From IMG/VR virus record IMGVR_UViG_3300011113_000640, positions 186,001 through 250,000 of that record: 64,000 nt of DNA. One strand, 5' to 3'. The notes under the pieces are model-generated. The model was not told where the DNA came from and searched no databases. It saw nothing but the letters and a program-made list of their open reading frames with translations. Numbering within the stretch: the first letter of the stretch is position 1; the number at the start of each line of letters is the position of its first letter. Shown piece after piece: positions 48 through 43,800 of the stretch. The translations under genes and the position numbers were made by a program.

Positions 48-839
48 TTAAGTCTTGTAGTTTTCTACGATAGCAAGATCCAGGTTGCCTGTGCTGAGCT
101 GGCTGGTGCCTGCCCATGTGTCAACTTCGGCGCCCGACTTGGCTGTAACGCCTTCGTCGCTGAAGAAGTTGGCTGCAAACTCAACATCGTTGACCACTTG
201 TGCATAATTCCAAACATCGCCGGTGTTGGCATTGCCACCTGTGGCACCGCCAGCAAAGTTCTGCAAGAACTTGTTGGTCAGTTTGCTGATTGGTGTTTCA
301 GAAGAATCGTTGCTGAAGTAGCTGATGCTCATGTTACCAGCTGTGGGGCTTAAATCGCTGGTAAGAACACAGATACCTACTGCGTTTACACGACCAGAAC
401 CTGTGGAGCCCAAGGCAGCTGTGGCTGTGAAGATGGTTCCAAGTGCTGCGTTTGGAGCACCATAGCTGGCCCAGTCTGTGTTGCCTACCACTGTGATACG
501 ATAGGCTTGATTGGCTACCAAGGCTGTTCGGCTTGTGATATCTGCCACCAAGAATTTGTGTGAACCTTTTTGACGTATGATCTGTCCATCGGCTTCAGCG
601 AATCCTGTCACAAACACACGACACTTGACAATAGGATAGTTGGTGCTGGCCACGGTAGGAGGCTGAGCTCCGCCAACCACGCCTAGATATTCCGTGGCCG
701 AATCCCATACAGGACTAGGGTACACAGGTGCTGTCAAACTAGTTAGTGCATTGAAACCAATGTCTACACCTGGATTTGCACCGGTAGTAGAATTATAACC
801 AGTTTCGATAATTTTTTTAATTTTGAGAGGACGTCCCAT
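48..839 (-). CDS. Virion structural protein (hypothetical)
   Basis: Start moved to MGRPLKIKK (ATG 839), which has an AAGGAG SD upstream. Protein is G/T/A/N-rich and has a TAAATA late motif upstream. Confidence 0.75.
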   Translation of the reverse strand: MGRPLKIKKIIETGYNSTTGANPGVDIGFNALTSLTAPVYPSPVWDSATEYLGVVGGAQPPTVASTNYPIVKCRVFVTGFAEADGQIIRQKGSHKFLVADITSRTALVANQAYRITVVGNTDWASYGAPNAALGTIFTATAALGSTGSGRVNAVGICVLTSDLSPTAGNMSISYFSNDSSETPISKLTNKFLQNFAGGATGGNANTGDVWNYAQVVNDVEFAANFFSDEGVTAKSGAEVDTWAGTSQLSTGNLDLAIVENYKT

Positions 840-867
840 TTTTGTTTTCTCCTTAAAGAAGCCCAAT

Positions 868-925
868 GCGAGTTCTAGTCGCTACGCGGTGGGGTTAATC
901 ACCGCATAAAACGCAGGATTGCGTT
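868..925 (-). ncRNA. Structured 5' leader with three tandem hairpins
   Basis: Plus-strand pairs are AACGCA/TGCGTT (910-925), GCGGTG/CACCGC (886-905) and GCGA/TCGC (868-882). The middle stem extends by a U-G wobble only on the minus strand. The element lies between TAAATA and the SD. Confidence 0.5.
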
Positions 926-931
926 GACAAG

Positions 932-12160: not shown

Positions 12161-12337
12161 ATGGAAAAAGAAACCCTTGACATGCGCAAAGAAGCCCTGC
12201 AAATGGCCTGGTACATGCGCGGCGGCCTGACCTACGACCAGGCTCTGCAACTCAGTGTCAGCGAGCGAACCTTGATCAACAATCTGATCAAGGACAATCT
12301 TGAAACAACCAAAAAATCTGGACTGCCGTTTTTCTGA
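12161..12337 (+). CDS. Small gp51-like baseplate assembly protein (58 aa, MEKETLDMRKEALQMAWYMRGGLTYDQALQLS...), probably the -1 frame extension of gp26
   Basis: Translated by hand because it is below the ORF track cut-off. Its stop overlaps the next ATG; no SD. Confidence 0.7.
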   Translation: MEKETLDMRKEALQMAWYMRGGLTYDQALQLSVSERTLINNLIKDNLETTKKSGLPFF

Positions 12338-12840
12338 TGCTAGACCTAGAACGAGTCACCTACGACATAGAACGCTGGATCGCAAACTTTGTAGAAGTTC
12401 CACATCCAAGTCTGGGTGGCTGGGCTCCGTGTCCTTATGCCAGAAAGGCCAGGCTGGATCGTGACTTTGAAGTCAGGCTGGGTGTGAATCCTTATTTTGA
12501 TTTGAAAGTTGTTGCTCAAACTGGCATTGCCAAAAGTGTTGTAATTTTTGTTTACGAATCAACAGCTTACAACTACGAGCAGTTCCATGCTCACGTTGAG
12601 TCAGCCAACACAGAATTTTTATTGGGACAAGACCTGCTGGCCTTGGAGGATCATCCCGACAGTGCCGAGATAGTCAACGGTGTGAGCATGAATCAAGGTA
12701 CCTATGCCTTGGCCTTGGTACAATGTCTCAGCGACTTGGACAACAAAGCGCAGTTGATGGCCGGCAAGGGATTTTACGAGACTTGGCCAGAAGATTACTT
12801 GCACGAATTGTTCCAGCACAGAAAGGATCCCAGATCATGA
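12337..12840 (+). CDS. DUF1415-like hypothetical protein
   Basis: WIANFVE...PCPYARKA and EDHPD motifs resemble DUF1415-type proteins. Translationally coupled. Confidence 0.55.
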   Translation: MLDLERVTYDIERWIANFVEVPHPSLGGWAPCPYARKARLDRDFEVRLGVNPYFDLKVVAQTGIAKSVVIFVYESTAYNYEQFHAHVESANTEFLLGQDLLALEDHPDSAEIVNGVSMNQGTYALALVQCLSDLDNKAQLMAGKGFYETWPEDYLHELFQHRKDPRS

Positions 12841-13271
12841 CCTATCAGTTTGCCAGAATTAATCTTGACCAAGTCACATATCAACCCACCGTGTCTTGGG
12901 AATACTTGCGCGAACCCAATATACCTGTGTTGCAGGACATCTATCGAACCTACTGTATCTACAAGCACTTTGCCAGCGTCATGCCCTTGTTTGACAGCCA
13001 ATTCCGTGATACCATGACTGATGTGATCGGTTATAGAGAAGACGGTGAACTGGTGGCTTTTAGTTTGATGAAACGGCTAGATGATCGAAATGTATTGGCC
13101 AGTCAGTTTGCGTGGACCTATCACAATCCCAAGACTAGACTGGGCATGGAGAGTTTGAAGACCGAATGTGCTATCTATAGAGATCGCGGTTTTAGTTACT
13201 TGTACTTGGATCAAGCACACCTGTACAAACAAGGCCTTGAAGGCTTTGAAATTTTAGGACCTATACAATAA
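12837..13271 (+). CDS. Aminoacyl-tRNA-protein transferase-like protein (ATE_C/Bpt GNAT domain)
   Basis: GYREDGELVAFS...FAWTY...RLGMESLKTEC...RGFSYLYL...YKQ follows the ATE C-terminal domain pattern. ATGA-coupled start at 12837. Confidence 0.65.
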   Translation: MTYQFARINLDQVTYQPTVSWEYLREPNIPVLQDIYRTYCIYKHFASVMPLFDSQFRDTMTDVIGYREDGELVAFSLMKRLDDRNVLASQFAWTYHNPKTRLGMESLKTECAIYRDRGFSYLYLDQAHLYKQGLEGFEILGPIQ

Positions 13272-13606
13272 TGGCAGACTTATACACAATTTGGGCAAAC
13301 AAAGAAGGCGATATCAGTGATATTGATTGGGTCAACGGAATGAAAAGTTTCTTTGACCACTTGGTAACTGAAGGCAAAATGCAAAGCTACAGGATCACTA
13401 GATGCAAAATGGGATTCCGTAGCATTGCAGACATGCCCGAATGGATGATACTCATGGAGTTCCGAGACATGGCACAAATGGATGCAGCATTCCGACGTGT
13501 TGCTCCGCTTGAAGGCGAACTCGAAACAAAACACAAATCATTTAATCAGTTTGTCGCCGGAGACATACAACACGCACTGTTTAGGGATTGGCCTGATCAG
13601 TTCTGA
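13271..13606 (+). CDS. DUF6614-like small alpha/beta protein
   Basis: YRITRCKMGF, PEWMILMEFRDMAQMDAAF, ALFRDWPD. Confidence 0.6.
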   Translation: MADLYTIWANKEGDISDIDWVNGMKSFFDHLVTEGKMQSYRITRCKMGFRSIADMPEWMILMEFRDMAQMDAAFRRVAPLEGELETKHKSFNQFVAGDIQHALFRDWPDQF

Positions 13607-14017: not shown

Positions 14018-14446
14018 TTAAATTTTGTTTTTTATGTGACTACCATGTATACGGCAAACTATCTGTCCGTTGTAGTAGTCGTCTGACTCTAATACTCTAT
14101 GATTAAATTGTTCTCTGGCTTCTACGTAACTACAAGCTGCCTTTGAGTTGCAATAAAATAATATTTCTCTTGTGAAGTTGTCTGAGCCTAGCTCTGCAAT
14201 GTCTCGGTTGAGTTGATCGTTGCTTCCATAGTATAGTTGCCAGTCTGAATCTATTTTGCTTCTTATTTTCTTACGTTTCTTGTTGCCGTTCTTTAATTTT
14301 ACTACTTTGTATGTTGTCTTACTGAATTTTGCTAATTTTTTTCCAATATACTTTCTGCCGGTTACGTTATTTGTGATCAAATAAACAAAACCAACACAAT
14401 CATCGGGCAGTGTTTCAATTTGTGTGTTTTCGTACAACCATACCAT
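14018..14446 (-). CDS. GIY-YIG endonuclease (T4 EndoII/Seg-like)
   Basis: GFVYLITNNVTGRKYIGKK, YYGS, FTREIL, EAREQF, YYNG. Confidence 0.88.
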   Translation of the reverse strand: MVWLYENTQIETLPDDCVGFVYLITNNVTGRKYIGKKLAKFSKTTYKVVKLKNGNKKRKKIRSKIDSDWQLYYGSNDQLNRDIAELGSDNFTREILFYCNSKAACSYVEAREQFNHRVLESDDYYNGQIVCRIHGSHIKNKI

Positions 14447-14464
14447 GGACTAATAGTTATCATT

Positions 14465-15475
14465 TTACCACTCAGTTGCATATTTTTCATCCACCCTGCT
14501 GGCTATACACTTAGTCTGGCACTCTTGCCATCCAAACGTTTTAAATGTTGTCGCCCAAAAATCATCAGTTACAGCATCAGCAAGTGTGCGACGATTCAAA
14601 TCAAATTTAGCGGCAATAGCTTTCCATTCTGAGTTGTGGCTGTAGCGGTTTGCCACCCAACAGCAAGGAAACAATCTACCTTGTGCGTCAATGTAAAGTC
14701 CTTTGTTGCCAATTTCACACAGGGGTTTTACACCGTTGACCTCTGTTGCTGATTTGTATAATTGTATGTTCTTGGTGTTTGCCTGTGAATTGAGCCCACG
14801 CGAGCTTAACAAAACAACATCTCTTTCAAATCTATGCGAGCCGCTGACAAACTTTCTGCTGGGTTCTAGTGGATCGTCTTTGCCGTACCCGGGATAGATT
14901 GTTCCAAACTTGGTGCTTTTTGTTAATTGAAATGCATCCATGCCCAAGGACAGGGCTAAATTTTTCATATGATCTATACGATCTTCGTTAAATTTAAATG
15001 CAATAGCGGCCCAAACTAACCGACAGTTGCTGTTATCTCGTAGTACCTCGACCCCGGTAACAATACTGTTAAAATCACTGTTTACTCGATACAAATTATT
15101 GCTGTCATTGTCGTAGCCATCAACGCTAAAATGTACAGTGTCCTGTTCAGTGAGCACACGGCCTAGTTCTTGCCACCATTCTGGTTTCTTGTGTGATCCA
15201 TTGGTGACAATAACGATCTCTACAGGTTTGATGGACTTGATATATTCAATCACTGGTACAAGATCGTGGGCATAGATAGGATCACCGTCGTCGCCGCAGA
15301 ATGTGATCTTTTCTACATGGTCAAGCACAAATTCTGCGGTAAAGTTTCTTTTGAAAAATTCTAAATCTAGTTCAGTGTTTACTAAACTGTCAGGAACTTC
15401 TTGTCTAGCACAACGAGGACAACGCAAGGTACACTTTGAACTGATTTCAATGTGAAAATGCCAAGTGGCTAACAT
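14465..15475 (-). CDS. Radical SAM protein with a C-terminal SPASM/twitch-like domain
   Basis: CTLRCPRC, CGDDGDP, TNGS; C-terminal C...PCCW...CQTKC. GAGGT SD lies before ATG 15475. Confidence 0.9.
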   Translation of the reverse strand: MLATWHFHIEISSKCTLRCPRCARQEVPDSLVNTELDLEFFKRNFTAEFVLDHVEKITFCGDDGDPIYAHDLVPVIEYIKSIKPVEIVIVTNGSHKKPEWWQELGRVLTEQDTVHFSVDGYDNDSNNLYRVNSDFNSIVTGVEVLRDNSNCRLVWAAIAFKFNEDRIDHMKNLALSLGMDAFQLTKSTKFGTIYPGYGKDDPLEPSRKFVSGSHRFERDVVLLSSRGLNSQANTKNIQLYKSATEVNGVKPLCEIGNKGLYIDAQGRLFPCCWVANRYSHNSEWKAIAAKFDLNRRTLADAVTDDFWATTFKTFGWQECQTKCIASRVDEKYATEW

Positions 15476-16335
15476 AGTTGTACCTCTCGTTGCCATTGAT
15501 CTTGAAATACTGTTTTATTTTTGTTTGTACTACAAGCACTGGCACACACTGAATTGGGGGTGTCTGTTTTCCAGGTCAATTTTACAGTTGCCAAATCATC
15601 TTTGACAAAATCTCGTTGAGTGGCTCCAAGCCAGCAACAGGCACTGACACGACCTTGCGCATCGATGTACATGCTTTTTTCATTGAGCACATGACATTTG
15701 ATAGGCCCTGGCTTGACCGCGGGCTGCTGCCATCCTATGGGAAATTCCAAATGGTCAGTGAATCCGCGTTTGCTGACCTTGGCACGAAACCACTTGAATC
15801 CCATGTCACGGGCCAATTGCTCGCAAGCATCCACCTGATGTTGATTGTGTTTGTATACCAGCATGTCCCAATGGGCACTTCCGCCCGCGGCAATGTAGGC
15901 TTGAACATTGCTCATCAGCTTGGCCCAATTGACATTTTTTCGATAAACATGATTGGTATCTTGTAATCCATCTATGCTAAACACGCAGTAATCTTTGGGC
16001 TGATCAAACAAACGTCCTAGTGCATGCCAAAAGAACGTGCTCTGCACAGCACCATTGGTATTCATGCCCAACACAATGTTGGGATTGATTTTTCTAAAGT
16101 ATTTGTAGATGTCCATGGTATAGTAGCCTGCAGCCGGATCGCCATAGTTGCCACACATGAACATTTTGTCCAGATTACCAATCACTCGGTCACTGAAATG
16201 TTGTTGTATTTGTTCCATCCGCAGGTGATGCTTGACGTCTTTTCTGAATTGCGTATCAGTCTCTCTGGCACACATGGGACATGCGGCCTGGCAAACGTCT
16301 GTGGGTTCAATGTGCAAGACCTTGATTCTACGCAA
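15469..16335 (-). CDS. Radical SAM protein with a C-terminal SPASM/twitch-like domain
   Basis: CQAACPMC, CGNYGDP, TNG, SIDG; C-terminal SACCW...CASAC. Confidence 0.9.
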   Translation of the reverse strand: MRRIKVLHIEPTDVCQAACPMCARETDTQFRKDVKHHLRMEQIQQHFSDRVIGNLDKMFMCGNYGDPAAGYYTMDIYKYFRKINPNIVLGMNTNGAVQSTFFWHALGRLFDQPKDYCVFSIDGLQDTNHVYRKNVNWAKLMSNVQAYIAAGGSAHWDMLVYKHNQHQVDACEQLARDMGFKWFRAKVSKRGFTDHLEFPIGWQQPAVKPGPIKCHVLNEKSMYIDAQGRVSACCWLGATQRDFVKDDLATVKLTWKTDTPNSVCASACSTNKNKTVFQDQWQREVQLC

Positions 16336-31478: not shown

Positions 31479-34400
31479 ATGGCCACAACGTCTAGACAAA
31501 CAGCGATTTTTGGTGTAGAAGATTGGAAGCAGATCTATCAAACCTATCAAGAAGCCAACTTTCAAAGCTATGATTTTGAAACACTGCGCAAGACTTTTGT
31601 GGATTATTTGCGCACCTACTATCCAGAAACATTCAACGACTACATTGAAAGTTCAGAATTCATTGCCTTGCTGGATGTCATGGCATTTATGGGCCAGGCC
31701 CTGGCTTTCCGCACAGATCTCAACACCAGAGAAAACTATTTAGACACTGCCGAGCGTCGCGACAGTGTGGTCAAGCTGGCCAACTTGGTAAGTTATAGTC
31801 CCAAGCGAAATACCGAAGCTTCGGGCTTGCTCAAGGTATTCAGCATTTCTACTACAGAAAACATCATAGACTTTACTGGAGCTAATCTGGCCAACATCAC
31901 GGTCAACTGGGCCGACCCTACAAATTTAAACTGGCAAGAACAGTTTACCACCATCTTGAATGCGGCCTTGGTCAACACACAAAAATTTGGTAACCCCGGT
32001 GCAAATCAAGTCATCCTGGGAGTTGACACACAAGAATATACCATAAACCTGGTTCCTGGATACTTGCCGGTCATACCCTATACCTCCACCATAGACACAG
32101 TCAACATGCCATTTGAAGTGGTCAGTAGCACCACCTTGGGCGAAAATTTCATCTACGAACCTCCGCCTTTACCTAATGGTCAGTTCAACATCCTGTTTAG
32201 GAATGATCAACAGGGATTTCTTAGTGCCAACACTGGTTTCTTTTTCTTGTTCAAACAAGGAGTACTACAGAATCAAGATTTCAACTTGCCAGAACGCATA
32301 ACCAATCGTGCTGTGGCCATCAACATTGAAGGGGTAAACAACACTGATGTATGGTTGTATCAACTTGACAACGTGGGCAACATTTCCAACTATTGGCAAA
32401 AGGTACAAAGTGTTTATGCGGCAGCAGTTGAACAGTTGGCACCCGGAACAAGAAATATCTACAGTGTGACCAGCCGTACCAATGATCAGATCACTCTTAA
32501 CTTTGGCGACGGTGTGTTTTCTACCATACCAGTAGGTACCTTCCGTACCTATGTGCGTGCCAGCAATGGTCTTACCTACATTATCAACCCGGTAGAGATG
32601 CAAAGCGTGGCCATACCCATCAGTTATGTCAGCCGCACAGGGCAGATCGAAACCATGACTCTTACCTGTGGATTGACCAATCCTGTGACCAACGCCCAGG
32701 CACGCGAGACCATAACCACCATCAAACAACGAGCACCTGCACAATATTACACACAGAACAGGATGGTCAACGGTGAAGACTATTCGCAGTTTCCATTCAC
32801 ACAATACAACAGTATTTTAAAAAGCACAGCCGTCAATCGTGCCAGCATTGGTACCAGCCGTTATCTCGATCTAGTGGACCCCACTGGAAAATATTCCAGC
32901 ACCGACATTTTTGCCAGCGATGGCGCACTATGGGAAAGCAATGATCTCTATAGCTTTCAATTTTCTTGGTTGACTACCAACGATATTTCAGATGCTGTAA
33001 TCAACCAGATCTCGCCCTTGGCGTTGCGTGCAGGGCTACAACAATTTTACTATGCCAATTATGTCAGACCCAATTTAGCAGTGCTGAATTTTACTTGGAA
33101 TCAAAGCACAGTGCTGACCAATGAGACCACGGGCTATTTTCAAAACGCAGCCGGCAATCCTGTGCCCATTGGTATCTTTACCAGCAACAATGCCAAATAC
33201 ATAACAGAACGAAGCCTGGTACAATTTGCTGCACCCACTGGCTTTTACTTCGACGCAAACAATCACCTGGTGGTAGGAGTCCCCACACGTGCCGATGACA
33301 AGCTGACCATATGGGCCAGCCCCACCGCGGTGTACGAAGCCGGCAATGCCCAGGGCTATGGCAATCTTCCGTCTGGAGTGGGTCCTGTGGTACTCAACAA
33401 TTACGTGCCCACAGGTGCTATACCTGTGCAGGTCATTCCGGTTTTTATCACTGACATTCCTGTGTCTGTGCAACAAAGCATAGTATCACAGATAGCATTG
33501 AATCAGAATTTTGGACTGGGATATAATAATCTCACAGCTACCTGGTATGTGATCACTTCCAATAATCTAGCAACAAATGCTGCATTTAGCTTGGCCAATG
33601 CCCAAAGCACAACTGGAACCAACCAGGATGCCAGTTGGTTGGTACAGGCCACCTACAATGGAACAAGCTACACCGTGGTATCCAGGAGTCTAGATTATTT
33701 CTTTGGCAGTGTATTACAGACAAGATTTTTCTTTTATACCAGCGATCCCATCTACGACAGCAGGACCGGCACTGTGATCAGTGACTATGTGAACATACTT
33801 AAAATCAACACACAACCAGATTTGGCTGAGCCATTGGGATCTGACACAGTGTTGAACATAATAGATCAACCTGTGCTCAGTGATGGACTGGTGGACGATT
33901 TCCAGGTTGTGGTCAGTTTTGCCCAGGCACCCGACAATCTCACTCCAGTGAATCCAGACTTCTTTACTGATATAGTGGCACCCACAGTGGATGCCAATTC
34001 TAAATTGGTTTTCTTTGAAGCCACAGTGGATTTTGACAACCTACAGCGTTTCCTGTTGCTGGAACCTGGTGTGGTCAACAGTGATTATGCCACAAAAACC
34101 GCCATACAAGCTGTACAGACTCAATATGTCACAGGACAAGTTTTCTATGCCTATAGCGAGGGAAATTTCTATGTGTTGAGTCTAGACAGTCTAGGTGATC
34201 CTACCTTGCTTTCAAGCACAAATTATTTGGCAAAAACAGGCAGACAAGACTTGTATTTCCAATACAGACACAATAGTCCGTTGACCAGTAGAATCGATCC
34301 AGGCAGTACCAACATCATCGATGCCTATGTGGTCACCAATGCTTACTATACTGCTTATATCAATTGGTTGCAAGATACCACAGGCACAGTTGTTGAACCT

Positions 34401-34883
34401 TTGCCTCCTACCATCGATGAATTAAACACGGCCTATCAAGGACTACAAGATTTCAAGATGTTGTCTGACAACATGATCCTCAACAGCGTGGATTTTCAAC
34501 CCTTGTTTGGGCAAAAGGCCGACCCAGCCTTGCGTGGAATAATCAAGGTCATACGTGCAGCTGGTAGCACAGCCAGTGTAAGTACCATAAAAAATCTTGT
34601 GCTGGCCAATCTCAATGCATTTTTTGATATAGCTAACTGGAACTTTGGCGACACCTTTTATTTCAGCGAACTATCGGCCTACATACATCAAAACATTGGT
34701 GACACCGTCAGCAGTGTGGTCTTGGTTCCACTTAATACACAAAAGAGCTTTGGTGACTTGTACGAGATAAGATGTGCCCCCAATCAGATTTTTGTCAACG
34801 GTGCCACGGTCAATGACATTGAAGTGATCACTGCTTTGACCAGCACCAATCTGCAGACTGCTCCTGGTAGTGGAGTGATTTAA
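31479..34883 (+). CDS. gp6: Baseplate wedge protein, gp6-like
   Basis: YDFETLR, ENYLDTAERRDSV..LA..VSY.PKR, FGDG, ET...IKQRAP..YYTQNRMVNGEDY. Confidence 0.9.
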   Translation: MATTSRQTAIFGVEDWKQIYQTYQEANFQSYDFETLRKTFVDYLRTYYPETFNDYIESSEFIALLDVMAFMGQALAFRTDLNTRENYLDTAERRDSVVKLANLVSYSPKRNTEASGLLKVFSISTTENIIDFTGANLANITVNWADPTNLNWQEQFTTILNAALVNTQKFGNPGANQVILGVDTQEYTINLVPGYLPVIPYTSTIDTVNMPFEVVSSTTLGENFIYEPPPLPNGQFNILFRNDQQGFLSANTGFFFLFKQGVLQNQDFNLPERITNRAVAINIEGVNNTDVWLYQLDNVGNISNYWQKVQSVYAAAVEQLAPGTRNIYSVTSRTNDQITLNFGDGVFSTIPVGTFRTYVRASNGLTYIINPVEMQSVAIPISYVSRTGQIETMTLTCGLTNPVTNAQARETITTIKQRAPAQYYTQNRMVNGEDYSQFPFTQYNSILKSTAVNRASIGTSRYLDLVDPTGKYSSTDIFASDGALWESNDLYSFQFSWLTTNDISDAVINQISPLALRAGLQQFYYANYVRPNLAVLNFTWNQSTVLTNETTGYFQNAAGNPVPIGIFTSNNAKYITERSLVQFAAPTGFYFDANNHLVVGVPTRADDKLTIWASPTAVYEAGNAQGYGNLPSGVGPVVLNNYVPTGAIPVQVIPVFITDIPVSVQQSIVSQIALNQNFGLGYNNLTATWYVITSNNLATNAAFSLANAQSTTGTNQDASWLVQATYNGTSYTVVSRSLDYFFGSVLQTRFFFYTSDPIYDSRTGTVISDYVNILKINTQPDLAEPLGSDTVLNIIDQPVLSDGLVDDFQVVVSFAQAPDNLTPVNPDFFTDIVAPTVDANSKLVFFEATVDFDNLQRFLLLEPGVVNSDYATKTAIQAVQTQYVTGQVFYAYSEGNFYVLSLDSLGDPTLLSSTNYLAKTGRQDLYFQYRHNSPLTSRIDPGSTNIIDAYVVTNAYYTAYINWLQDTTGTVVEPLPPTIDELNTAYQGLQDFKMLSDNMILNSVDFQPLFGQKADPALRGIIKVIRAAGSTASVSTIKNLVLANLNAFFDIANWNFGDTFYFSELSAYIHQNIGDTVSSVVLVPLNTQKSFGDLYEIRCAPNQIFVNGATVNDIEVITALTSTNLQTAPGSGVI

Positions 34884-37800
34884 TGGCCAAGCAAGTACGC
34901 AGTGTAGATTTTCTTCCAGAGATCTTCCAGACTCCGATCAACAAACAATTTTTGTCAGCCACGCTGGATCAGCTGATACAAAATCCTGAGTTCTCTCAAA
35001 CACAAGGCTTTGTGGGTCGGCGCATAGGCCCCGGAGTCAATGCCAATGACTACTATGTGATTGAACCTACCAAGACCCGTACTGACTATCAGTTAGAGCC
35101 CGGAGTAGTGCAGGTAGATCCAGACAACATTCAACAAGTGGTAGATGCCATAACCTATCCCGGAATCAACGATGGCCTGGGCACACAAGGCGCATATACC
35201 AACAACGCCGATCGCTTGTATACCAGCGATTATTATACTTGGGATCCATTTGTGGATTTTGACAAGTTTGTCAACTATGCACAATATTATTGGTTACCAG
35301 GAGGTCCCTTGCCCGTGGATGTCAGCAGCACTGAAATTCCACTCACAGACACTTTTACAGTGACACGAGCCAATGGTGCCTACACCATCACAGGTGCGAC
35401 CGGAACCAATCCAGAAATCACGCTGGCACGTGGAGGCAGTTATGAATTTAAGGTAGCACAAAACGCCCAAGAAACTGAAACATTTTCAGTTAGAAACGCT
35501 GACACCAGCAACTGGAACATAGACTTCCAGGCCAATCCTACCTTGACCTTGACACGTGGCAACACTTATGTGTTCAATCTCACACAGACATTTCCTTGGA
35601 GTTTTTGGATCAAGACCGAGGCCACTCTGGGCACCACCAACATCTATGATCCAACCTTGCCCAATGGCATCAAGGCCATCAGCAACAACGGTGCCGGCAC
35701 TGGCTTGATCACATTTACAGTGCCACAAACGGCACCTGATACCTTGTACTATGCCAACGATGTAGAATTCAACTTGCGTGGCCAGATCAACGTCATAGAC
35801 GCAACCCCCGGAACCGGTGCTGGTTTTTGGATACAAACAGATCCCGGTGTAAATGGACGTATTCCGTCTACGCCCAATATCAGCAGCCGACTTGGCACCG
35901 AACAAGGAGTGATCAACAACGGAGAAGATTTAGGTACTATTACATTCAATGTGCCTGCAGTGACCGCACAAGATTTTTACTTCAACATGCCTAACATAGG
36001 ACTAGTAGATGTGGTCACTGATCTAGGCTTCAATGATATCAATGGTGTGTACCTTGACGACTTTTTTGCTGCATATCCCACTGGTATAGATGGTACTACT
36101 AGTTTGCAAAATCTCACCTTGGTATTCCTTAGCCAGGATGCTAATCCGACCCCAGCAAATCTCTATGATCTCTGGCGCATTCAGTATTTGACCGACGTCA
36201 ATGGAACTTATTTTAATTTGCAATACGTTGAAAGCATTGATGTTGAAAACAAATTTGTGGTTGGATTTGGCGAGGTCACATCCAATACCAGTTGGTACAA
36301 GACCACCGACGGATGGTTTGAACAAATACCTTTGTTGACCGCAGATCGTGATGTGTTGTTTTATCAAGATGGTACTGACCCAGGAATATTTGGTCGCATA
36401 CGCTTGGTAGATGCTGTGGGATCGCCTTTGCCTGTCAACGAAATCATTGGCGCCAAGAACTACACAAGTCCCAATGGAGTCGCATTCAGCAACGGAATGA
36501 AAGTGGTATTCCGTGGTCCTGTGACACCTGCCTCTTATCAAAACAACGAATACTATGTGGAAGGTGTAGGAACGGCCATTCAACTATTGCTGACTGATGA
36601 ATTTGTAACTCCAGAAACTTATACTCAATCAGCTTTGGTACCATATGATACTACTCCGTATGACACTGACCCTTTTGATGACAGCCTAAACCAACCTCTA
36701 GTACCGGATTATCTCACCATCAACCGTGCCAGTCCAGATCTCAATGCCTGGACCCGAAGCAATCGTTGGTTTCACATAGACGTAATCAACGCATCTGCGG
36801 CCTACAATAATTTTGTACCTACCCTGGACAATCGTTTTAGAGCACGCAGACCAATCTTGGAGTTCCGTGCAGGAACAAGATTGTATAATTCAGGCACGCA
36901 AGGCTTGCCACCTGTCAACCTAGTGGATCTTGTGACCACTGATGCCTTGAGCACAGTCAACGGTAGCCTTGGTTACAGTTCAGATGGTTACACTCTGCTT
37001 GATGGAAGTACGGTAATCTTTGCTGCAGACACAGACCCAGAAGTGCGCAATAAAGTTTATCAAGTACAGTTTGTTACTGTGGACACCAATGCAGAAGATT
37101 CTACCATAGTTGATGTGCCTGTGATAGTATTGACACCAATAGCCACAGCCCAAGTAGACAACACCGTGGTATGTTTGGACGGAATAGAATACCAGGGTTT
37201 CACATACTACTACGATGGGGCAGAATGGGTAGAAGCACAACTCAAAATCAGTGTCAATCAACCTCCGCTGTTTGATGTCTATGATACCAATGGCATAAGT
37301 TTCGGCAATCAAACCATTTATCCTAGTTCAAATTTCACAGGCAGTCCGTTGTTCAGTTATGCCATTGGGGATGCAGAGCCTGATTTGGTGCTGGGATTTC
37401 CTTTGACTTATCTCAGCTTGACCAATATAGGTGACATAGTATTTGACAACAACCTTTACAAGGACTCATTTTCATACACTGTAAACAGTCAAGGCCAATC
37501 TGTGCCTATCAGCACAGGTTTTGTAAGACAGTATTCTGATCGTTTGAACTATCAACGCGAGTTGGGCTGGCAAACAGGTATTACCTCCAGTCTGGTCCGT
37601 CAACAGTTCCGTTTTGTCTATGATGGTGCTCCTTTGTTGTTGGATGTGGCGGTAACTACCGATAACACAGTACCTGCCGTACAAATATTCATCAATGGAC
37701 TGTTTGTAGAATCCAATAATTATACCTACACCATTGGTACCAACACAACAACCATAAATTTCTCTACTACCTATGTGCCCAGCGATGTGATTGAAGTGTC

Positions 37801-40800
37801 GGTGTTGAGTGACCAGATCAGTGTGCAAGGATTTTATCAGGTTCCTATGAATCTCAGCAACAATCCCTTGAACGGCAACAGTGATCAATTTACTCTAGGA
37901 ACTATAAGGAATCACTACAGCACCATTGGTCAAAATTTGGTAGATCTCACAGGTCCTGTGATTGGTGCCAACAACAGCCGAGACCTTGGCAACATTGTGC
38001 CCTACGGTCTGCAGATACTACAACAAAGTTCGCCTTTGACCCTGACCGGTTATTTCATGCGCGATCGCAGTTACAATATTTTTGCATCCTTGGCCTACAA
38101 CAGCGGAGAATATGTCAGCTTCAAGGAACAATTACTCAGTGCGGTGTCCACTTTTGGCATAGCCGACTATGGCAACTGGAGCACGGCCACATTACTGGAC
38201 AACTGCATAGCCAAGATTACCTCGGGTCGCACCAACCTTAACAGTTTTTATTGGAGCGACATGTTGCCCACAGGCACCACGTTTGTGTCCAACAGTTACA
38301 CCGTAAATCCTATAACCACCAATCGATTCAATTTGATCCAGAGCTATGATTTTACCACATCAAACTATCAAGGCTTGTGCGTTTACATCAACAATGTGAT
38401 TCTGGTGCGTGGCCGTGACTATGTGGTCAGCACCGAAGGACCTACACTCACTATCACAGTAACATTGAACATTGGTGACGTGGTCGTCATCAATGAATAC
38501 ACCGACACGGCTGGTAATTTTGTACCCAACACACCGACCAAACTGGGACTTTATCCCAAGTATGAACCGCGTTATTTCTATGACACCAACTATGTGAATC
38601 CTACCTGGGTCATACAAGGACACGATGGATCAATCACTGTGGCCTTTGGCACACCCACCGAACCAGATCCTAGAGACGCTGTGTTGCTGGAATTTGAAAC
38701 CAGGATCTACAGCAACCTCAAAAATGATGGCAATCCTCCACCCCTGGTGGCCGAAGATGTGATTCCTGGCTATTTCAGAACCACTGATTATACCGCCGCA
38801 GAAACAACCACTATTTTGGGCGAAAGTTTCTTGACCTGGGTGGGCGCCAACAAGTTGGATTACACACAACAAACCTACCAGGTCACAAACGAATTTACCT
38901 ACAACTACAGCCAAGCCGCCAACAGACTAGACAATCAACCCTTGTTGGGCGCATGGCGTGGTATCTATAGATATTTCTATGACACACTCACACCCAACTC
39001 CACTCCTTGGGAAATGTTGGGTTTCAGCGAACAACCCATCTGGTGGGAAGACCAGTATGGTCCAGCACCTTACACCAGCGACAACTTGGTGCTGTGGGGC
39101 GACCTTGAGGCCGGCCTGGTCAACGATCCAGTGGCACCGTATGTGATACCCAAATATCGTAGACCTGGACTTACTTCGGTGATTCCTGTGGATGATCAAG
39201 GACAACTACTGCCTCCATTCTACAGCGTGATGGGGGCATACAACCCTCAAGGATTCCAGAAAAGTTGGCAGGTCGGCGATGGTGGCCCAGTAGAAGCTTC
39301 GTGGTGGCAGAGCTCAAATTATCCATTTGCTGTCATGCGATTGTTGTTGCTTACAAGACCAGCACAGTTTTTCAGCCTGTTTGCTGATCGTGATCTCTAC
39401 AGATACGATGTTGAATTTGATCAGTATCTCTACAATGGCCGCTATCGATTAAGACCCCAGGACATCCAAGTCTATGGCAATGGAGTCAGCAAGGCCAGTT
39501 ACATAAACTGGATAGTGGATTACAACCAACAGTGGGCAGTCAACAGCACCAGCGCATTGACCACAGATTTGAGTAATATTGATGTGCGTTTGTGTTATCG
39601 TTTTGCTTCGTTTGTGACAGGATCAAACCTAAGACTGTTTTTAGAAAAAGGCGCACCACAAAGTGAGAATGACAGCTTGTTGATACCGCCTGAAAGTTAC
39701 AACCTATTTGTTTATAAAAATCAACCAGCCAATCGTCTGAACTACAGTGCCGTGGTCGTAGAAATTGTTGAAGGTGGCTACAGTGTGTACGGATACAGTA
39801 CCACAGATCCTTATTTCAGCATTTATTCCAGCCGCACAGCCGGCACTGGACAAACTATCAGTGCCGGAGGTTACAGTGTGACAGTGCCGGCCGAATACAG
39901 TTCTACTGTGATTGAAATTCCTTATGGTTACACATTTACCAGCCGTGCCAGCGTGGTAGATTTCTTGCTCAGCTATGGCAAATATTTAGAAGGCCAGGGT
40001 CTCAGTTTTGTAGTGCAGGAAAATGGTTATACTTTGAACTGGGCACAAATGGCTCAGGAATTCCTTTACTATGCTGGACAAGGTTGGACCACAGGCACCA
40101 TAATAAATCTCAATCCGTCGGCCACACAGATACAGGCCTTGAAACCCGGGGCTGTGGTTGATTCTCTACAGACATACACGCCTGAAAATCTCATACAGGA
40201 TCAGAATCGTAGAGAATTGCCGGCCAAGAATCTCATAATCTATAGACAGGACAACACTTTCCAACTCAATCCTGATCCAGCCGGCAATCAAACTGTGAGT
40301 TATCTACAATTACAGTTTACGGATCTTGAAGACATCTTGATCCTGAACAATCGCACCATATTCAATGATCTGATCTATGACACTGTCACAGCTGAGAGAC
40401 AACAACGCCTGCGGTTGGCTGCTACCACCAGCACACAGTGGAATGGAACTCTCAATGCTCAGGGTTTCATACTGAACCAAAACAATGTGGTAGCTTGGCA
40501 ACCCAATGAGAAATATACCAAGGGCGAAATTGTATTATACAAAAACAATTATTGGCAAGCAGCTGCCTTGGTCCAGCCCAAGGAAAAATTCGAGTATTCT
40601 GATTGGTACAAGAGCAACTTTGATCGAATCCAACAGGGATTGTTACAGAACCTGGCAACCAAGGCCGATCAGTTGGCCAACAGCTACAATACTCAAACGG
40701 CCAATCTCAACCGAGACAACGATCTATTGGCCTATGGGCTGATAGGATTCCAGCCAAGACAGTACATGATAGATCTCAATCTCACTGATACTAGTCAGGT

Positions 40801-43800
40801 CGGTTTGTATCAACAGTTTATCAAGACCATGGGTAGCCGTCGTGCCACGCAGTTGTTGACACAGGCCAACTTGAATCCCTTGACCGCACAATACAATATC
40901 TATGAAACCTGGGGCATATTGGTCGGCACCTATGGAGCACAGGCCAATCGCAGCTGGTTTGAGGTCGATCTTGATGAAGCCTTGTTGAGTGGCAACCCGA
41001 GCACATTCCAAATAATAGAACCTGGGCAAACCACAGAAGCCAATCAAGCAATTCTGTTGCAAAATCTCTGGGCTGAAAGCTATGCCATACCCAACACCAA
41101 CATACTGCCTACTACCTATTCGAGAAATCTAGACACTGCTTTGCCATCGGCCGGCTATGTCAATGTCAATGATGTTGATATCACAGTGTTCAACTTGAAT
41201 GACCCTACCAACATAGCTGCCAATCTTTCTCGCATAGGTTTAGGCACCCGTATTTGGGTAGCACAAGACAACAGCTACGATTGGAACATTTACCAGTGTG
41301 CTCAAGTGCCAGGTCGTTTGACATCAATATCAGACAATCTCAACGGTACCTCTCGCGCCACATTTAGTTCACAGATCAGTCTTGTTCGCGGTGATCTTAT
41401 CATCATCAGATATTTCAGTGATTTGGTAGATGGTGTGTATCGAGTACTCAGTGTGCCTAACATAAACTCCGTGGTCATAGAATATGCTTTTGTCAATACC
41501 AATCAAACCACACTGACCGGTACAGGGTTAGCATTCTATCTCCAGACCATGCGTGTGGCTCAGGCCAGCGATGTTATCACGTTGCCGTACGCAAACCAAC
41601 TGATTCCAGGAGCACAGGTCTGGGTCGACGACAACGGTTCTGGACACTGGACAGTGCTGGAAAAAACTGATCCTTTCCAACCCACACAGGCATTGACAAA
41701 CCCAAATCAAGGTGTCAATTCTAGATTTGGCGCCAGCGTAGCACAGTCCAGCAACCATTTCTCGATGGTGGCCGGAGCCCCCAATGATGAATCAGGTGAT
41801 GGTGCTGTTTACACTTATCGTATAAATCTTTTCAATCAATACGTGGAAAACGTCATACTGTTTTTGATAGCAACTGGTGCGGCAGGGTATGGCAACAGTG
41901 TGGACTTTGGAGACAGGACCTGGGCAGTGGCTGGTGCCAGTGCCAGCAACGGCGGAACCGGCTATGTGACACCGATCTATCTTGTGCCCGGCAGCAATAC
42001 ATTCTTACAAACTCAACTGTTGGTGGCTCCGGACCCTGACTACAGCACCATCAGTGAATTTGGAGCTGCAGTCAAACTCAGTGGTGACGAACGCTGGTTG
42101 TATGTGGGCGCACCAGCTACCAACACTGTGTATGCCTATGCCCGAGTAGACATACCGCAACAATCTGCGACCTATACAGCCAATGGCACAACTCAGAGTT
42201 TCAACTGGTCAAACACAATACAGATAGATTACACCAAGCCCGACCAGATGATCGTGGTTGTCAACAACACCGTGCAACAATACGGCACAGATTATACACT
42301 GACCAACAATTTGGTATCATTTTCCTCTGTGCCTACGCTCAACAACCAGATCAAATTCACCCGTCGCACGTTCAAACAGCTAGACTCAAACACCTACCTC
42401 AACGTGACTCAAAACAGTGCCACTGGATCTGGTTCAGGAGCTAGATTTACTGTGACCAATACACGTGGCGATTATCAGGTCAGTATCACCGCACCTGGCA
42501 CCAGTTATGCTCCAGGCGATCAGCTGACAATCAGTTATACTCAGGTTGATCCTATTGGAAGCGCGGCCAACAATTTGATCATCACTGTGGTTTCCGTGGT
42601 CAGTGGAGGAATCACAGGGTTTACCACAGCAGGCAGCGGGGTTGGCAACACTGCTGTGTTTGATCTGTCAGACTCATTGTATACAGCCACCAACATATGG
42701 TCATTTACAGTCACAGTCAATGGAGTATTGCAACGTCCATACCTGGATTATACCTTTGCAGGAACCACTATTACTTTTGTCACAGTGCCACCAGCTGAAG
42801 CAGTGATTTACGTTGACAGTGCCAGCCAGGGAGCTTATTGGCAGTACGTGGACCAAATGCAAGTGGCCGGCATAGATGCCAACGCAACTCTTGGCGCCAG
42901 CATAACCACAGACGGTCTTGGACGTCAGATACTGTTGGGTGCACCGCAGGCATCGGCCGACGATGCCGAGGGCGATCCCATAGCCAATGCCGGTGCTGTG
43001 TATGCGTTTGATCGCAGCGTGTACAGATATATTGTTGACAACTCAACACAGCTGACCTATGCCATACCGGGCACATTGACCGGTCCAATAGCAGTGAGAT
43101 TAAACAGCCAATATCTCACCAACTCGGCACAATACATCAACGGCGAATTCACAGTATCGGGTTCTAACGTAGTGCTATCTAGCTCGGTGGCATTGACCGT
43201 GGGCGATTTTTTAGAAATTGAAACCAATCAATTCCAACAGTTGCAAAAGTTTGCCAGCAACACAGTGATAGACGAAAGCCAATTTGGCGCTAGCCTTGAT
43301 ATATGTTCCAACAGTTGCAGTCTGTATGTTGGAGCACCCAAAGACACCTACGCTTCCGAGGTCATACAGTCAGGCATGGTCCAGCGCCAGGTCAATCAAT
43401 CAAGGATCTATGGAATTATCTCCAGCACCATAGCTAACCCAAGTCTTACCTCGGGTGATACCATCAGGATAAATCTTGAACTGGTTGCTGTTCCAGCATC
43501 ACCCAACAACACTGTGGCAGGTCTAGCGGATGCTATAAATTCTTCAGGCATACCCAATGTCAGAGCAACCCCCACCGCAGATGTTTATTACATTGGTGAT
43601 GGCAACACCAAGATCTACAGCATAGGCAATATGTATTCAGCGGCCGAGTCTTATACTTCGGTAGTTTATGTCAACGACGTGTTGCAAACACAGGGCGTGA
43701 ACTATACTTACAACAACACCACTCAAGAAATAAGTTTTGTTACAGCCCCGGCTCTTGATGCCAGCATACAAATAGTGTCAGGTCGTTTGGTTCTAACAGT

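What the first reader, a model, noticed from the sequence alone, without database searches (positions are those of the whole stretch)
12337..13606. Three-gene cassette with a minimal aminoacyl-tRNA-protein transferase (ATE/Bpt)-like enzyme
Seen: three translationally coupled ORFs (DUF1415-like CPYA protein, 144-aa GNAT-type protein, DUF6614-like protein) follow the baseplate chaperone genes. Known: ATE1/Bpt enzymes transfer Arg or Leu from tRNA onto N-terminal Asp/Glu to create N-degrons, and the ...LG..SL..E...G..YLYL...YK pattern is typical of their C-terminal domain. Inference: the phage may hijack N-degron proteolysis or perform tRNA-dependent aminoacylation of another substrate, with the neighbours as partners or a stand-in for the missing N-terminal domain.
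Basis: partly seen in the sequence, partly recalled or inferred. Interest (0 to 1): 0.72.

Follow-up and report, generated by a model that had tools for sequence, protein, structure and literature searches.

The report
Phage tRNA-dependent transferase with heme partner
A freshwater giant phage carries a conserved gene pair: a stripped-down relative of the enzymes that move amino acids from tRNA onto proteins, always beside a likely heme oxygenase. The pair resembles an arginine-tailoring pathway more than a classical protein-degradation tagger.

Summary
Three overlapping, purifying-selected ORFs lie at 12337-13606.

- **ORF2 (144 aa)** is a true homologue of the ATE_C domain of ATE1/Bpt. A family profile hits only ATE1 structures (E 2.8e-8). 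The catalytic Tyr-Lys and the Arg-binding Glu of ATE1 are conserved. The ATE_N domain, which reads acidic N-termini, is absent.
- **ORF1 (167 aa)** is not an ATE_N substitute by sequence or fold. It belongs to the DUF6875 (cytochrome P422) / DUF1415 / YqcI-YcgG thiolate-heme fold group and has an invariant Cys-Pro. Its only stand-out solved match is AglA, the guanidine N-hydroxylase of argolaphos biosynthesis.
- **ORF3** is a DUF6614 protein.

ORF1-ORF2 are adjacent in 92 of 92 loci, down to about 40% identity and in different genome contexts. ORF3 and an L-arginine amidinotransferase homologue join the pair variably.

The best reading is an Arg-tRNA-dependent ligase working with a heme oxygenase, like AglC/AglA, on an unknown amine acceptor. 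An N-degron role stays possible, because the phage also encodes ClpS, a ClpX-like ATPase, ClpP and tmRNA, but it has no direct support. I class it as a new variant of a known kind. No biochemistry was done.

The parts
12161..12337 (+). 58-aa ORF of unknown function. Its stop overlaps the ORF1 start (TGATG).
   Evidence: ORF list and sequence. No Pfam or PHROG match. Membership in the module is uncertain.
12337..12840 (+). ORF1, 167 aa: putative thiolate-heme 'sandwich-fold' oxygenase of the DUF6875 (cytochrome P422) / DUF1415 / YqcI-YcgG-like group. It has an invariant Cys32-Pro33 and an Asp105-His106-Pro107 motif.
   Evidence: Pfam DUF6875 at E 0.0067 for ORF1 itself, and in 10 of 16 family members (best 9e-5). 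phrog_28122 at 8e-14. AF2 pLDDT 94.6. AFDB clusters match uncharacterised proteins (E 1e-8, TM 0.75), DUF6875 and DUF1415. The only stand-out solved match is AglA 9ub3: Z 7.3, 149 residues aligned, next hit 5.5. DcsA is the best full-length Swiss-Prot model. Invariant residues come from alignment A2.
12837..13271 (+). ORF2, 144 aa: single-domain GNAT of the ATE_C family, a putative aminoacyl-tRNA-dependent aminoacyl transferase. Glu110 sits at the ATE1 Arg-binding position and Tyr130-Lys131 at the catalytic Tyr-Lys position. There is no ATE_N domain.
   Evidence: Pfam ATE_C at 21 bits for ORF2. Relatives score 26-34 bits, above the cut-off. Profile A4 against PDB finds only ATE1, at E 2.8e-8, and the alignment runs through the YK motif. 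AF2 pLDDT 94.3. Foldseek and VIA-align give MprF, FemX, ATE1 and Sbb17/Sba18 as top matches. Conservation: E110 in 33/37, Y130 in 35/37, K131 in 35/37.
13271..13606 (+). ORF3, 111 aa: DUF6614 protein, an accessory member of the module. Biochemical role unknown.
   Evidence: Pfam DUF6614 at E 2.1e-21, 76.5 bits. Present in 83 of 92 loci, absent from several divergent lineages. Atlas neighbours are viral DUF6614 clusters.

Best explanation
The invariant core of the cassette is a two-enzyme pair.

ORF2 is a stand-alone ATE_C-type GNAT. I infer that it takes an aminoacyl group from an aminoacyl-tRNA and joins it through a peptide bond to the free amine of an acceptor. Lys131 would stabilise the tetrahedral intermediate, as Lys304 of Ate1 and Lys305 of FemX do. 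The donor is most likely Arg-tRNA, because Glu110 occupies the position of the Arg-binding Glu277 of Ate1.

ORF2 lacks the ATE_N domain, so it cannot by itself recognise N-terminal Asp/Glu as ATE1 and Bpt do.

ORF1 is inferred to be a cysteine-ligated heme oxygenase of the YqcI-YcgG / P422 / DUF1415 fold group. It would oxidise the acceptor or the arginylated product, probably by N-hydroxylation. The published precedent is argolaphos biosynthesis: AglC uses Arg-tRNA to make aminomethylphosphonate-Arg, and the heme enzyme AglA then hydroxylates its guanidine.

In related phages an L-arginine amidinotransferase homologue and DUF6614 are built into the same cassette. In this genome the amidinotransferase paralogues lie elsewhere. 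The module therefore looks like arginine/guanidine-tailoring chemistry carried out during infection. The acceptor (small amine, polyamine-like compound, peptide or protein) is unknown.

Shown: homology, conserved catalytic residues, folds and gene linkage. Inferred: the tRNA donor, Arg specificity, heme binding, the order of steps and the acceptor.
For: ORF2 belongs to ATE_C:
- Pfam hits are at or above the cut-off in relatives.
- The family profile matches only ATE1 structures, at E 2.8e-8.
- The catalytic YK and the Glu277-equivalent are conserved in 33-35 of 37 diverse members. Their roles are taken from PMC9351520.
- Top structural matches are the tRNA-binding second GNAT domain of MprF (Z 15), FemX (14.3), Sba18/Sbb17 (13) and ATE1 (Foldseek TM 0.71).
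- The acetyl-CoA Q/RxxGxG/A loop is absent on reading the sequence.

ORF1 is heme-enzyme-like:
- DUF6875 hits occur in 10 of 16 members. DUF6875 is the thiolate-heme cytochrome P422 family, with a conserved Cys-Pro in its heme-binding motif.
- Fold matches are to DUF6875 and DUF1415 models, to AglA (Z 7.3, full length) and to DcsA.
- Cys32-Pro33 is invariant.

Linkage:
- ORF1-ORF2 are adjacent and mostly overlapping in 92 of 92 loci, down to about 40% identity. They occur in different contexts: after the baseplate hub, after RNR genes, or after capsid-like genes.
- An amidinotransferase homologue (AGAT E 1.6e-30, HsvA, SxtG) sits inside or beside the cassette in 24 of 92 loci, in five different arrangements.

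Precedent: AMPn-Arg is made with AglC + ArgRS + tRNA and is then hydroxylated by AglA. The argolaphos cluster holds a YqcI/YcgG gene plus PF13480 and COG3146 GNATs.
Against: - There is no biochemical evidence for any step.
- ORF2 itself scores below Pfam's ATE_C cut-off.
- Structure alone does not separate tRNA-dependent from acyl-CoA tandem GNATs: VipF scores Z 14.6 and N-myristoyltransferase about 14.
- The ORF1-AglA match (Z 7.3) lies in the range the tool calls 'middling'. The YqcI/YcgG Pfam family itself is not hit. The P422 motif RxGxVCP is matched only at Cys-Pro.
- No ferredoxin-type partner was found in the genome by a simple motif scan.
- The complex prediction for ORF1+ORF2 gave no verdict.
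- The amidinotransferase is not in this genome's own cassette, and its paralogues are common in these phages. Proximity elsewhere could therefore partly reflect gene-family abundance.
- The closest sequence family (ATE1/Bpt) acts on proteins, not small molecules.
Confidence: 0.42

Rival explanations
1. N-degron writer. ORF2, alone or with ORF1 as an acceptor-binding subunit, adds Arg or Leu from tRNA to protein N-termini. The tagged host or phage proteins are then fed to ClpS and Clp proteases.
For: - The nearest sequence family is ATE1/Bpt.
- The phage genome itself encodes ClpS (83.5 bits), a ClpX-like AAA+ ATPase, ClpP, Hsp20 and a tmRNA.
- ClpS is present in 3 of 3 complete related jumbo genomes that carry the cassette.
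- A long, Cys-less Bpt-like viral relative lies two genes downstream of a Clp_N-AAA (ClpA-like) gene.
Against: - The ATE_N domain carrying the acidic-N-terminus pocket and Zn finger is absent from ORF2, and ORF1 does not resemble it.
- The ClpS island lies about 110 kb from the cassette, and no ClpA (Clp_N) gene is present in the genome.
- Bacterial ClpS reads Leu/Phe/Tyr/Trp, not Arg (established knowledge). The conserved Glu110 points instead to an Arg-type donor pocket.
- The genes that actually travel with the pair are a heme-oxygenase-like protein and an amidinotransferase, not Clp components.
- The ClpS co-occurrence comes from one phage lineage only.
Confidence: 0.22
2. ORF2 is an acyl-CoA-dependent N-acyltransferase that merely descends from the ATE_C lineage. 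ORF1 prepares or modifies its small-molecule substrate.
For: Acetyl-CoA tandem GNATs (VipF, MAB_4324) and N-myristoyltransferase score almost as high as the tRNA-dependent enzymes in structure comparison. Some relatives also touch PF13480 Acetyltransf_6.
Against: - All significant sequence matches are to ATE_C/ATE1.
- The FemX/Ate1-type catalytic Lys and the donor-pocket Glu are conserved.
- The canonical pyrophosphate-binding Q/RxxGxG/A loop is absent on reading the sequence.
- PF13480 itself includes tRNA-dependent ligases.
Confidence: 0.12
3. ORF2 aminoacylates a lipid or cell-envelope precursor, in the manner of MprF or FemX, to alter the infected cell's envelope.
For: The best structural matches are the MprF synthase domain (Z 15) and FemX (Z 14.3).
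Against: Only the second GNAT domain is matched. There is no membrane segment and no first GNAT domain. Sequence similarity is to ATE_C, not to DUF2156/FemAB. The partner genes do not suggest envelope chemistry.
Confidence: 0.05
4. The genes are co-inherited neighbours with unrelated functions, for example anti-defence proteins that only retain enzyme-like folds.
For: All partners are small and uncharacterised. The cassette sits in a variable region beside a homing endonuclease. The complex prediction gave no verdict.
Against: The pair is kept adjacent, usually with overlapping stop and start codons, in every locus examined, despite relocation to different genomic neighbourhoods. Catalytic-type residues are invariant in both proteins.
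Confidence: 0.08

Closest known systems
ATE1 / Bpt aminoacyl-tRNA-protein transferases (Pfam ATE_N + ATE_C)
   Same: ORF2 shares the ATE_C GNAT domain. It keeps the W..Y..P...LG and YLYLG....YK motifs, the catalytic Tyr-Lys (klAte1 Y303-K304) and a Glu at the Arg-binding position (klAte1 E277).
   Different: ORF2 has no ATE_N domain, so it lacks the Zn-finger cysteines and the R80/Y25/Y87 pocket for N-terminal Asp/Glu. It is 144 aa, against about 235 aa for Bpt and about 500 aa for ATE1. It is obligately paired with a separate heme-enzyme-like protein. It is viral.
Argolaphos AglC / AglA pair (Arg-tRNA-dependent ligase plus YqcI/YcgG thiolate-heme guanidine N-hydroxylase)
   Same: Both combine a tRNA-dependent GNAT-superfamily ligase with a small cysteine-ligated, non-P450 heme-enzyme fold. 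AglA is the only stand-out solved match of ORF1. Both have an arginine theme.
   Different: The argolaphos GNATs are about 340-aa PF13480/COG3146 proteins, not ATE_C. ORF1 matches DUF6875/DUF1415 by sequence, not the YqcI/YcgG family. There are no phosphonate genes here. The setting is a phage, not an actinomycete gene cluster. The acceptor is unknown.
Cytochrome P422 (DUF6875) thiolate-heme enzymes
   Same: ORF1 family members hit the DUF6875 model over the N-terminal region that holds the invariant Cys-Pro. AFDB fold matches are to DUF6875 models. Both are alpha/beta sandwiches with a four-stranded sheet core.
   Different: ORF1 is shorter (about 165 aa against 180-300). The RxGxVCP motif is kept only as Cys-Pro. 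The Trp-binding motifs were not found. All scores are below Pfam's cut-off.
FemX / MprF-type two-GNAT aminoacyl-tRNA transferases
   Same: ORF2 superposes on their second, tRNA-binding catalytic GNAT domain at Z 14-15.
   Different: Those enzymes carry the acceptor-binding first GNAT domain in the same chain. ORF2 is a single domain, and its sequence family is ATE_C.

Membership tests
ATE1/Bpt aminoacyl-tRNA-protein transferase | ATE_C GNAT domain recognisable by sequence | tested here: met
   ORF2 scores 21 bits (cut-off 25). Relatives P0128, P0139 and P0166 score 33.5, 29.8 and 26.2 bits. Family profile A4 hits only ATE1 chains in the PDB, at E 2.8e-8.
ATE1/Bpt aminoacyl-tRNA-protein transferase | Catalytic Lys (klAte1 K304, FemX K305) preceded by Tyr | tested here: met
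   The HMM alignment places family YK on klAte1 Y303-K304. Y130 and K131 are each present in 35 of 37 diverse members. The K304A mutant is inactive according to PMC9351520.
ATE1/Bpt aminoacyl-tRNA-protein transferase | Donor amino-acid pocket: Ate1 S255/S273/E277/Y289 against Bpt A/A/Q/L | tested here: inconclusive
   By HMM alignment the ORF2 residues are A88/S106/E110/L122. This is a mix: Glu as in Ate1 (33/37), Ala and Leu as in Bpt. The Glu suggests a basic donor, but this rests on the alignment register and was not measured.
ATE1/Bpt aminoacyl-tRNA-protein transferase | ATE_N domain with four-Cys Zn finger and the positively charged pocket (R80, Y25, Y87) that reads N-terminal Asp/Glu | tested here: not met
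   ORF2 starts at the GNAT domain. There is no ATE_N hit in ORF1, ORF2 or ORF3 at E up to 1. The ORF1 fold does not match ATE1.
ATE1/Bpt aminoacyl-tRNA-protein transferase | Transfers Arg or Leu from tRNA to protein N-termini, creating N-degrons | not testable with these tools
   Needs in vitro transfer assays and N-terminomics. Only circumstantial context is available: ClpS, ClpP and a ClpX-like ATPase elsewhere in the genome.
Acetyl/acyl-CoA-dependent GNAT | Pyrophosphate-binding Q/R-x-x-G-x-G/A loop between strand 4 and helix 3 | tested here: not met
   The loop reads P-K-T-R-L-G-M-E-S (residues 98-106). It has a single Gly and no Q/R three residues before it. The pattern matches ATE1's S-L-G-K-V-S. 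This was read from the sequence only.
Thiolate-heme sandwich-fold enzymes (DUF6875/P422, YqcI/YcgG, DUF1415) | Shared alpha/beta sandwich fold | tested here: met
   AFDB clusters: DUF6875 (E 3e-4 to 5e-3) and DUF1415 (E 1e-3, TM 0.57-0.62), all with probability about 1. AglA gives Z 7.3 over 149 of 167 residues, next hit 5.5. DcsA gives TM 0.49. This is moderate evidence, not strong.
Thiolate-heme sandwich-fold enzymes (DUF6875/P422, YqcI/YcgG, DUF1415) | Conserved axial Cys near the N-terminus (P422 motif RxGxVCP; AglA Cys44) | tested here: inconclusive
   Cys32-Pro33 is invariant in 16 of 16 sequences and lies in the stretch that matches the DUF6875 model. The Arg and Gly of the motif are not in register. 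Residue-level superposition could not be done.
Thiolate-heme sandwich-fold enzymes (DUF6875/P422, YqcI/YcgG, DUF1415) | Binds b-type heme and shows a CO-difference Soret band | not testable with these tools
   Needs expression and spectroscopy.
DUF6614 | Match to the Pfam model above the cut-off | tested here: met
   ORF3 scores 76.5 bits (cut-off 25) over residues 3-110.

The most novel reading that the evidence does not exclude
A virus-encoded split arginyltransferase. ORF2 supplies the ATE_C catalytic half. The heme-thiolate protein ORF1 replaces the cofactor-binding ATE_N half, so that arginylation (and perhaps guanidine N-hydroxylation) of host or phage protein N-termini becomes redox- or O2-gated. 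It would work together with the phage's own ClpS, ClpX-like ATPase, ClpP and tmRNA toolkit, giving a complete viral N-degron writer-reader system.
Probability: 0.1. Interest if true: 0.85.

Novelty: new variant of a known kind. Interest (0 to 1): 0.64.

Why it matters
Aminoacyl-tRNA-dependent transferases outside the ribosome are few: ATE1/Bpt, LFTR, Fem, MprF and some natural-product ligases. A single-domain ATE_C enzyme has not been characterised.

This family is abundant in aquatic phages, with thousands of sequence clusters. It is always coupled to a member of the newly recognised non-P450 thiolate-heme enzymes.

If the pair makes an arginine-derived (possibly N-hydroxyguanidine) product during infection, phages would be shown to run tRNA-dependent secondary-metabolite-like chemistry. 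If it instead tags proteins, it would be the first viral N-degron writer.

Either result would give a function to three large families of unknown function (short ATE_C, viral DUF1415/DUF6875-like, DUF6614). It would also define the minimal catalytic unit of the ATE family.

Tried and rejected
- **Reference phages:** megablast of the region and tblastn of ORF2 against 50,697 phage records found no match. No cultured reference phage could be used.
- **ORF2 alone against PDB sequences:** only noise. A family profile was needed.
- **Profile-based locus searches:** these failed for lack of a conserved 7-10 column stretch.
- **Complex prediction of ORF1+ORF2:** no verdict, score 0.00. This is neither for nor against binding.
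- **ORF1-ORF2 fusion proteins:** none among the 120 cluster representatives. The longer hits are chimeras or the separate long Bpt-like group.
- **DUF6614 as an anti-Druantia factor (Druad1):** rejected. Druad1 is a 44-aa protein with only a nominal DUF6614 label.
- **The ~1.1-kb 'insertions' inside the cassette as homing endonucleases:** rejected. They encode amidinotransferase homologues.
- **Regulatory signals:** the T4 late-promoter motif, sigma-70-like promoters and terminators are not above chance. The 410-nt gap after ORF3 is not unusually structured (z -1.2).
- **Ferredoxin motif scan of the genome:** nothing convincing.
- **RNA sequencing runs holding the cassette:** none was listed, so transcription was not checked.
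- **Literature:** no paper on phage-encoded Bpt/ATE or ClpS-linked phage N-degron systems was found.
Full report
**Setting.** The window is bases 186001-250000 of a 320.5-kb viral record, estimated 93% complete. It is a T4-like jumbo myovirus. It has a gp20 portal, a gp26-like baseplate hub, a SegE-type homing endonuclease, two radical-SAM genes and gp46. The sequence recurs in lake, river and other freshwater DNA metagenomes, and the window carries the Rfam 'freshwater-2' motif.

**Observation.**
- ORF1 (12337-12840, 167 aa), ORF2 (12837-13271, 144 aa) and ORF3 (13271-13606, 111 aa) lie on the + strand. Their stop and start codons overlap as ATGA and TAATG.
- A 58-aa ORF upstream overlaps ORF1 by TGATG.
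- Against six relatives, differences pile up at third codon positions, and synonymous codon changes outnumber non-synonymous ones in all three genes.
- ORF2 has 2794 clusters of relatives at 90% identity and 120 representatives at 50% identity.

**ORF2 is an ATE_C protein.**
- Pfam gives ATE_C at 21 bits, just under the cut-off of 25. Divergent relatives of the same length score 26-34 bits.
- A profile of short relatives puts five ATE1 entries at the top of the PDB list, at E about 0.01-0.03.
- A profile that adds the longer viral relatives hits only ATE1, at E 2.8e-8, with an alignment that runs through the YK motif.
- According to the klAte1 structure paper, Lys304 is essential and equivalent to FemX Lys305. 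Glu277 binds the Arg side chain, and Bpt has Gln there. Acidic N-termini are read by R80, Y25 and Y87 of the ATE_N domain, beside a four-Cys zinc finger.
- In the viral family Y130 and K131 are each present in 35 of 37 members and E110 in 33 of 37.
- ORF2 begins at the GNAT domain and has no ATE_N.
- The AF2 model (pLDDT 94.3) is a complete single GNAT.
- Foldseek ranks MprF synthase domains, klAte1 and human ATE1 (TM 0.71) and the tRNA-dependent Sbb17/Sba18 at the top, mixed with the tandem acetyl-CoA GNATs VipF and MAB_4324.
- VIA-align gives Z 15 for MprF, 14.3 for FemX, 14.6 for VipF and about 14 for N-myristoyltransferase. In every case the match is to the second GNAT of a two-domain enzyme.

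Fold alone therefore does not settle the donor. The sequence family, the catalytic Lys and the missing CoA-binding loop favour an aminoacyl-tRNA donor.

**ORF1.**
- Its sequence matches are weak but consistent. DUF6875 is hit at E 0.0067 for ORF1 and in 10 of 16 family members (best 9e-5). Two PHROGs of unknown function also match.
- Alignment A2 shows an invariant Cys32-Pro33 and an Asp-His-Pro motif.
- The AF2 model (pLDDT 94.6) has no Foldseek match in the PDB.
- In AFDB clusters it matches uncharacterised proteins (E 1e-8, TM 0.75) and DUF6875 and DUF1415 models. 'DUF1415-like' therefore holds at fold level.
- An exhaustive VIA-align search gives one stand-out: AglA (9ub3), at Z 7.3 over 149 residues, with the next hit at 5.5.
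- In Swiss-Prot models the best full-length match is DcsA, the N-omega-hydroxy-arginine synthase.
- DUF6875 was recently shown to be 'cytochrome P422', a family of cysteine-ligated heme enzymes with a Cys-Pro heme-binding motif.
- AglA and DcsA are YqcI/YcgG thiolate-heme enzymes that hydroxylate guanidine nitrogens. AglA uses Cys44 as the axial ligand.

ORF1 is therefore best read as a small thiolate-heme oxygenase. The evidence is moderate. It shows no likeness to ATE_N.

**Linkage.**
- In 80 of 80 IMG/VR loci with 71-94% ORF2 identity, ORF1 sits upstream.
- The same holds for relatives at about 40-54% identity that lie after ribonucleotide-reductase genes, after capsid-like genes or elsewhere.
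- Over 92 loci the arrangements are 1-2-3 (64), 1-2-G-3 (12), 1-2-G (6), 1-2 (4), 1-G-2-3 (3), 1-2-3-G (2, one with G inverted) and 1-2-3-G-G (1).
- G is a 340-390-aa protein. Its family profile matches L-arginine:glycine amidinotransferase at E 1.6e-30, and also HsvA, SxtG and StrB1.
- In this genome three G paralogues lie elsewhere.

The obligate unit is thus ORF1-ORF2. ORF3 (DUF6614) and the amidinotransferase are frequent accessories.

**Mechanism.** The pairing of a tRNA-dependent GNAT-superfamily ligase with a thiolate-heme guanidine hydroxylase has a published precedent in argolaphos biosynthesis. Aminomethylphosphonate-Arg is made with AglC, ArgRS and tRNA, and AglA then hydroxylates it. 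That cluster encodes a YqcI/YcgG protein plus two GNATs described as aminoacyl-tRNA ligases. Three observations point to arginine/guanidine chemistry here:
- the Ate1-type Glu in the ORF2 donor pocket;
- the resemblance of ORF1 to guanidine hydroxylases;
- the recurrent arginine amidinotransferase.

I therefore favour an Arg-tRNA-dependent ligation to an unknown amine, coupled to heme-dependent oxidation (confidence about 0.4). The donor, heme binding, the order of steps and the acceptor are inferences.

**The N-degron rival.**
- The genome encodes ClpS (83.5 bits) in an island with Hsp20, a ribosomal bS21-like ORF (judged by eye from its sequence) and a ClpX-like ATPase. It also encodes ClpP and a permuted tmRNA.
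- ClpS is present in three of three complete related genomes.
- A long Cys-less Bpt-like viral relative lies two genes downstream of a Clp_N-AAA gene.

This keeps the N-degron idea alive at about 0.2. Against it:
- the acceptor-reading domain is missing;
- the Clp genes are about 110 kb away;
- no ClpA is encoded;
- the genes that actually travel with the pair are not Clp genes.

The complex prediction for ORF1+ORF2 gave no verdict.

**Novelty.** Databases already label relatives automatically as 'ATE_C domain-containing'. I found no paper on phage ATE/Bpt-like enzymes or on this gene pair. I rate it a new variant of a known kind: a single-domain ATE_C enzyme obligately coupled to a non-P450 thiolate-heme protein, widespread in aquatic phages.

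Noticed in passing
window 837-926 (-): Rfam 'freshwater-2' cis-regulatory RNA motif at 66.3 bits, above the gathering score of 49.9. This fits the freshwater origin of the phage.
   Followed up: no
window 34883-49648 (+): A single open frame of 4921 aa, preceded by an 1134-aa ORF (31479-34883), within the structural region. It was not analysed.
   Followed up: no
window 14018-16335 (-): A SegE-type GIY-YIG homing endonuclease is followed by two radical-SAM genes that overlap by 28 bases (15469-15496). They lie between the cassette and gp46. The same arrangement occurs in the relative L115.
   Followed up: partly
outside the window: G000:86827-90900 (L095, L097) and G000:73349-73870 (L096): A proteostasis island on the minus strand holds ClpS (102 aa), an Hsp20-like small heat-shock protein, a ribosomal bS21-like ORF and a ClpX-like AAA+ ATPase. 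A ClpP homologue lies 15 kb away. No Clp_N (ClpA) gene was found. The Hsp20 and bS21 labels are from reading the translations, not from a family search.
   Followed up: partly
outside the window: G000:270341-279075: A cluster of seven tRNA genes (Thr, Glu, Leu-CAG, Trp, Cys, Met x2) and a permuted two-piece tmRNA with tag peptide ANAANDEVFALAA. There is no tRNA-Arg.
   Followed up: no
outside the window: G000:169384-170553 (-), 253909-254928 (-), 79019-79942 (-): Three paralogues of the L-arginine amidinotransferase-like family lie in this genome. One sits beside a radical-SAM gene (L110).
   Followed up: partly
L089 4225-6765 (also L090, L091): A 254-aa viral Bpt-like protein has ATE_C and a Cys-less N-terminal extension. 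It lies just downstream of a 499-aa Clp_N + AAA (ClpA-like) gene and a 69-aa ORF, near DNA polymerase III alpha and RNase T genes.
   Followed up: partly
L115 (NZ_JBBAKG010000003.1, 148-kb contig): The same phage lineage, with a syntenic hub / ORF1-2-3 / segE / radical SAM / gp46 region and 64% ORF2 identity, is binned in a Haliscomenobacter sp. MAG. This is either a host hint or a binning artefact.
   Followed up: no
L086 4348-5040 and L100 1703-2422: In the lineage where the pair follows the ribonucleotide-reductase genes, a conserved 230-aa protein with no family match overlaps the end of the ORF2 homologue. It takes the place of ORF3 and the amidinotransferase, and a glutaredoxin-like ORF follows.
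   Followed up: no
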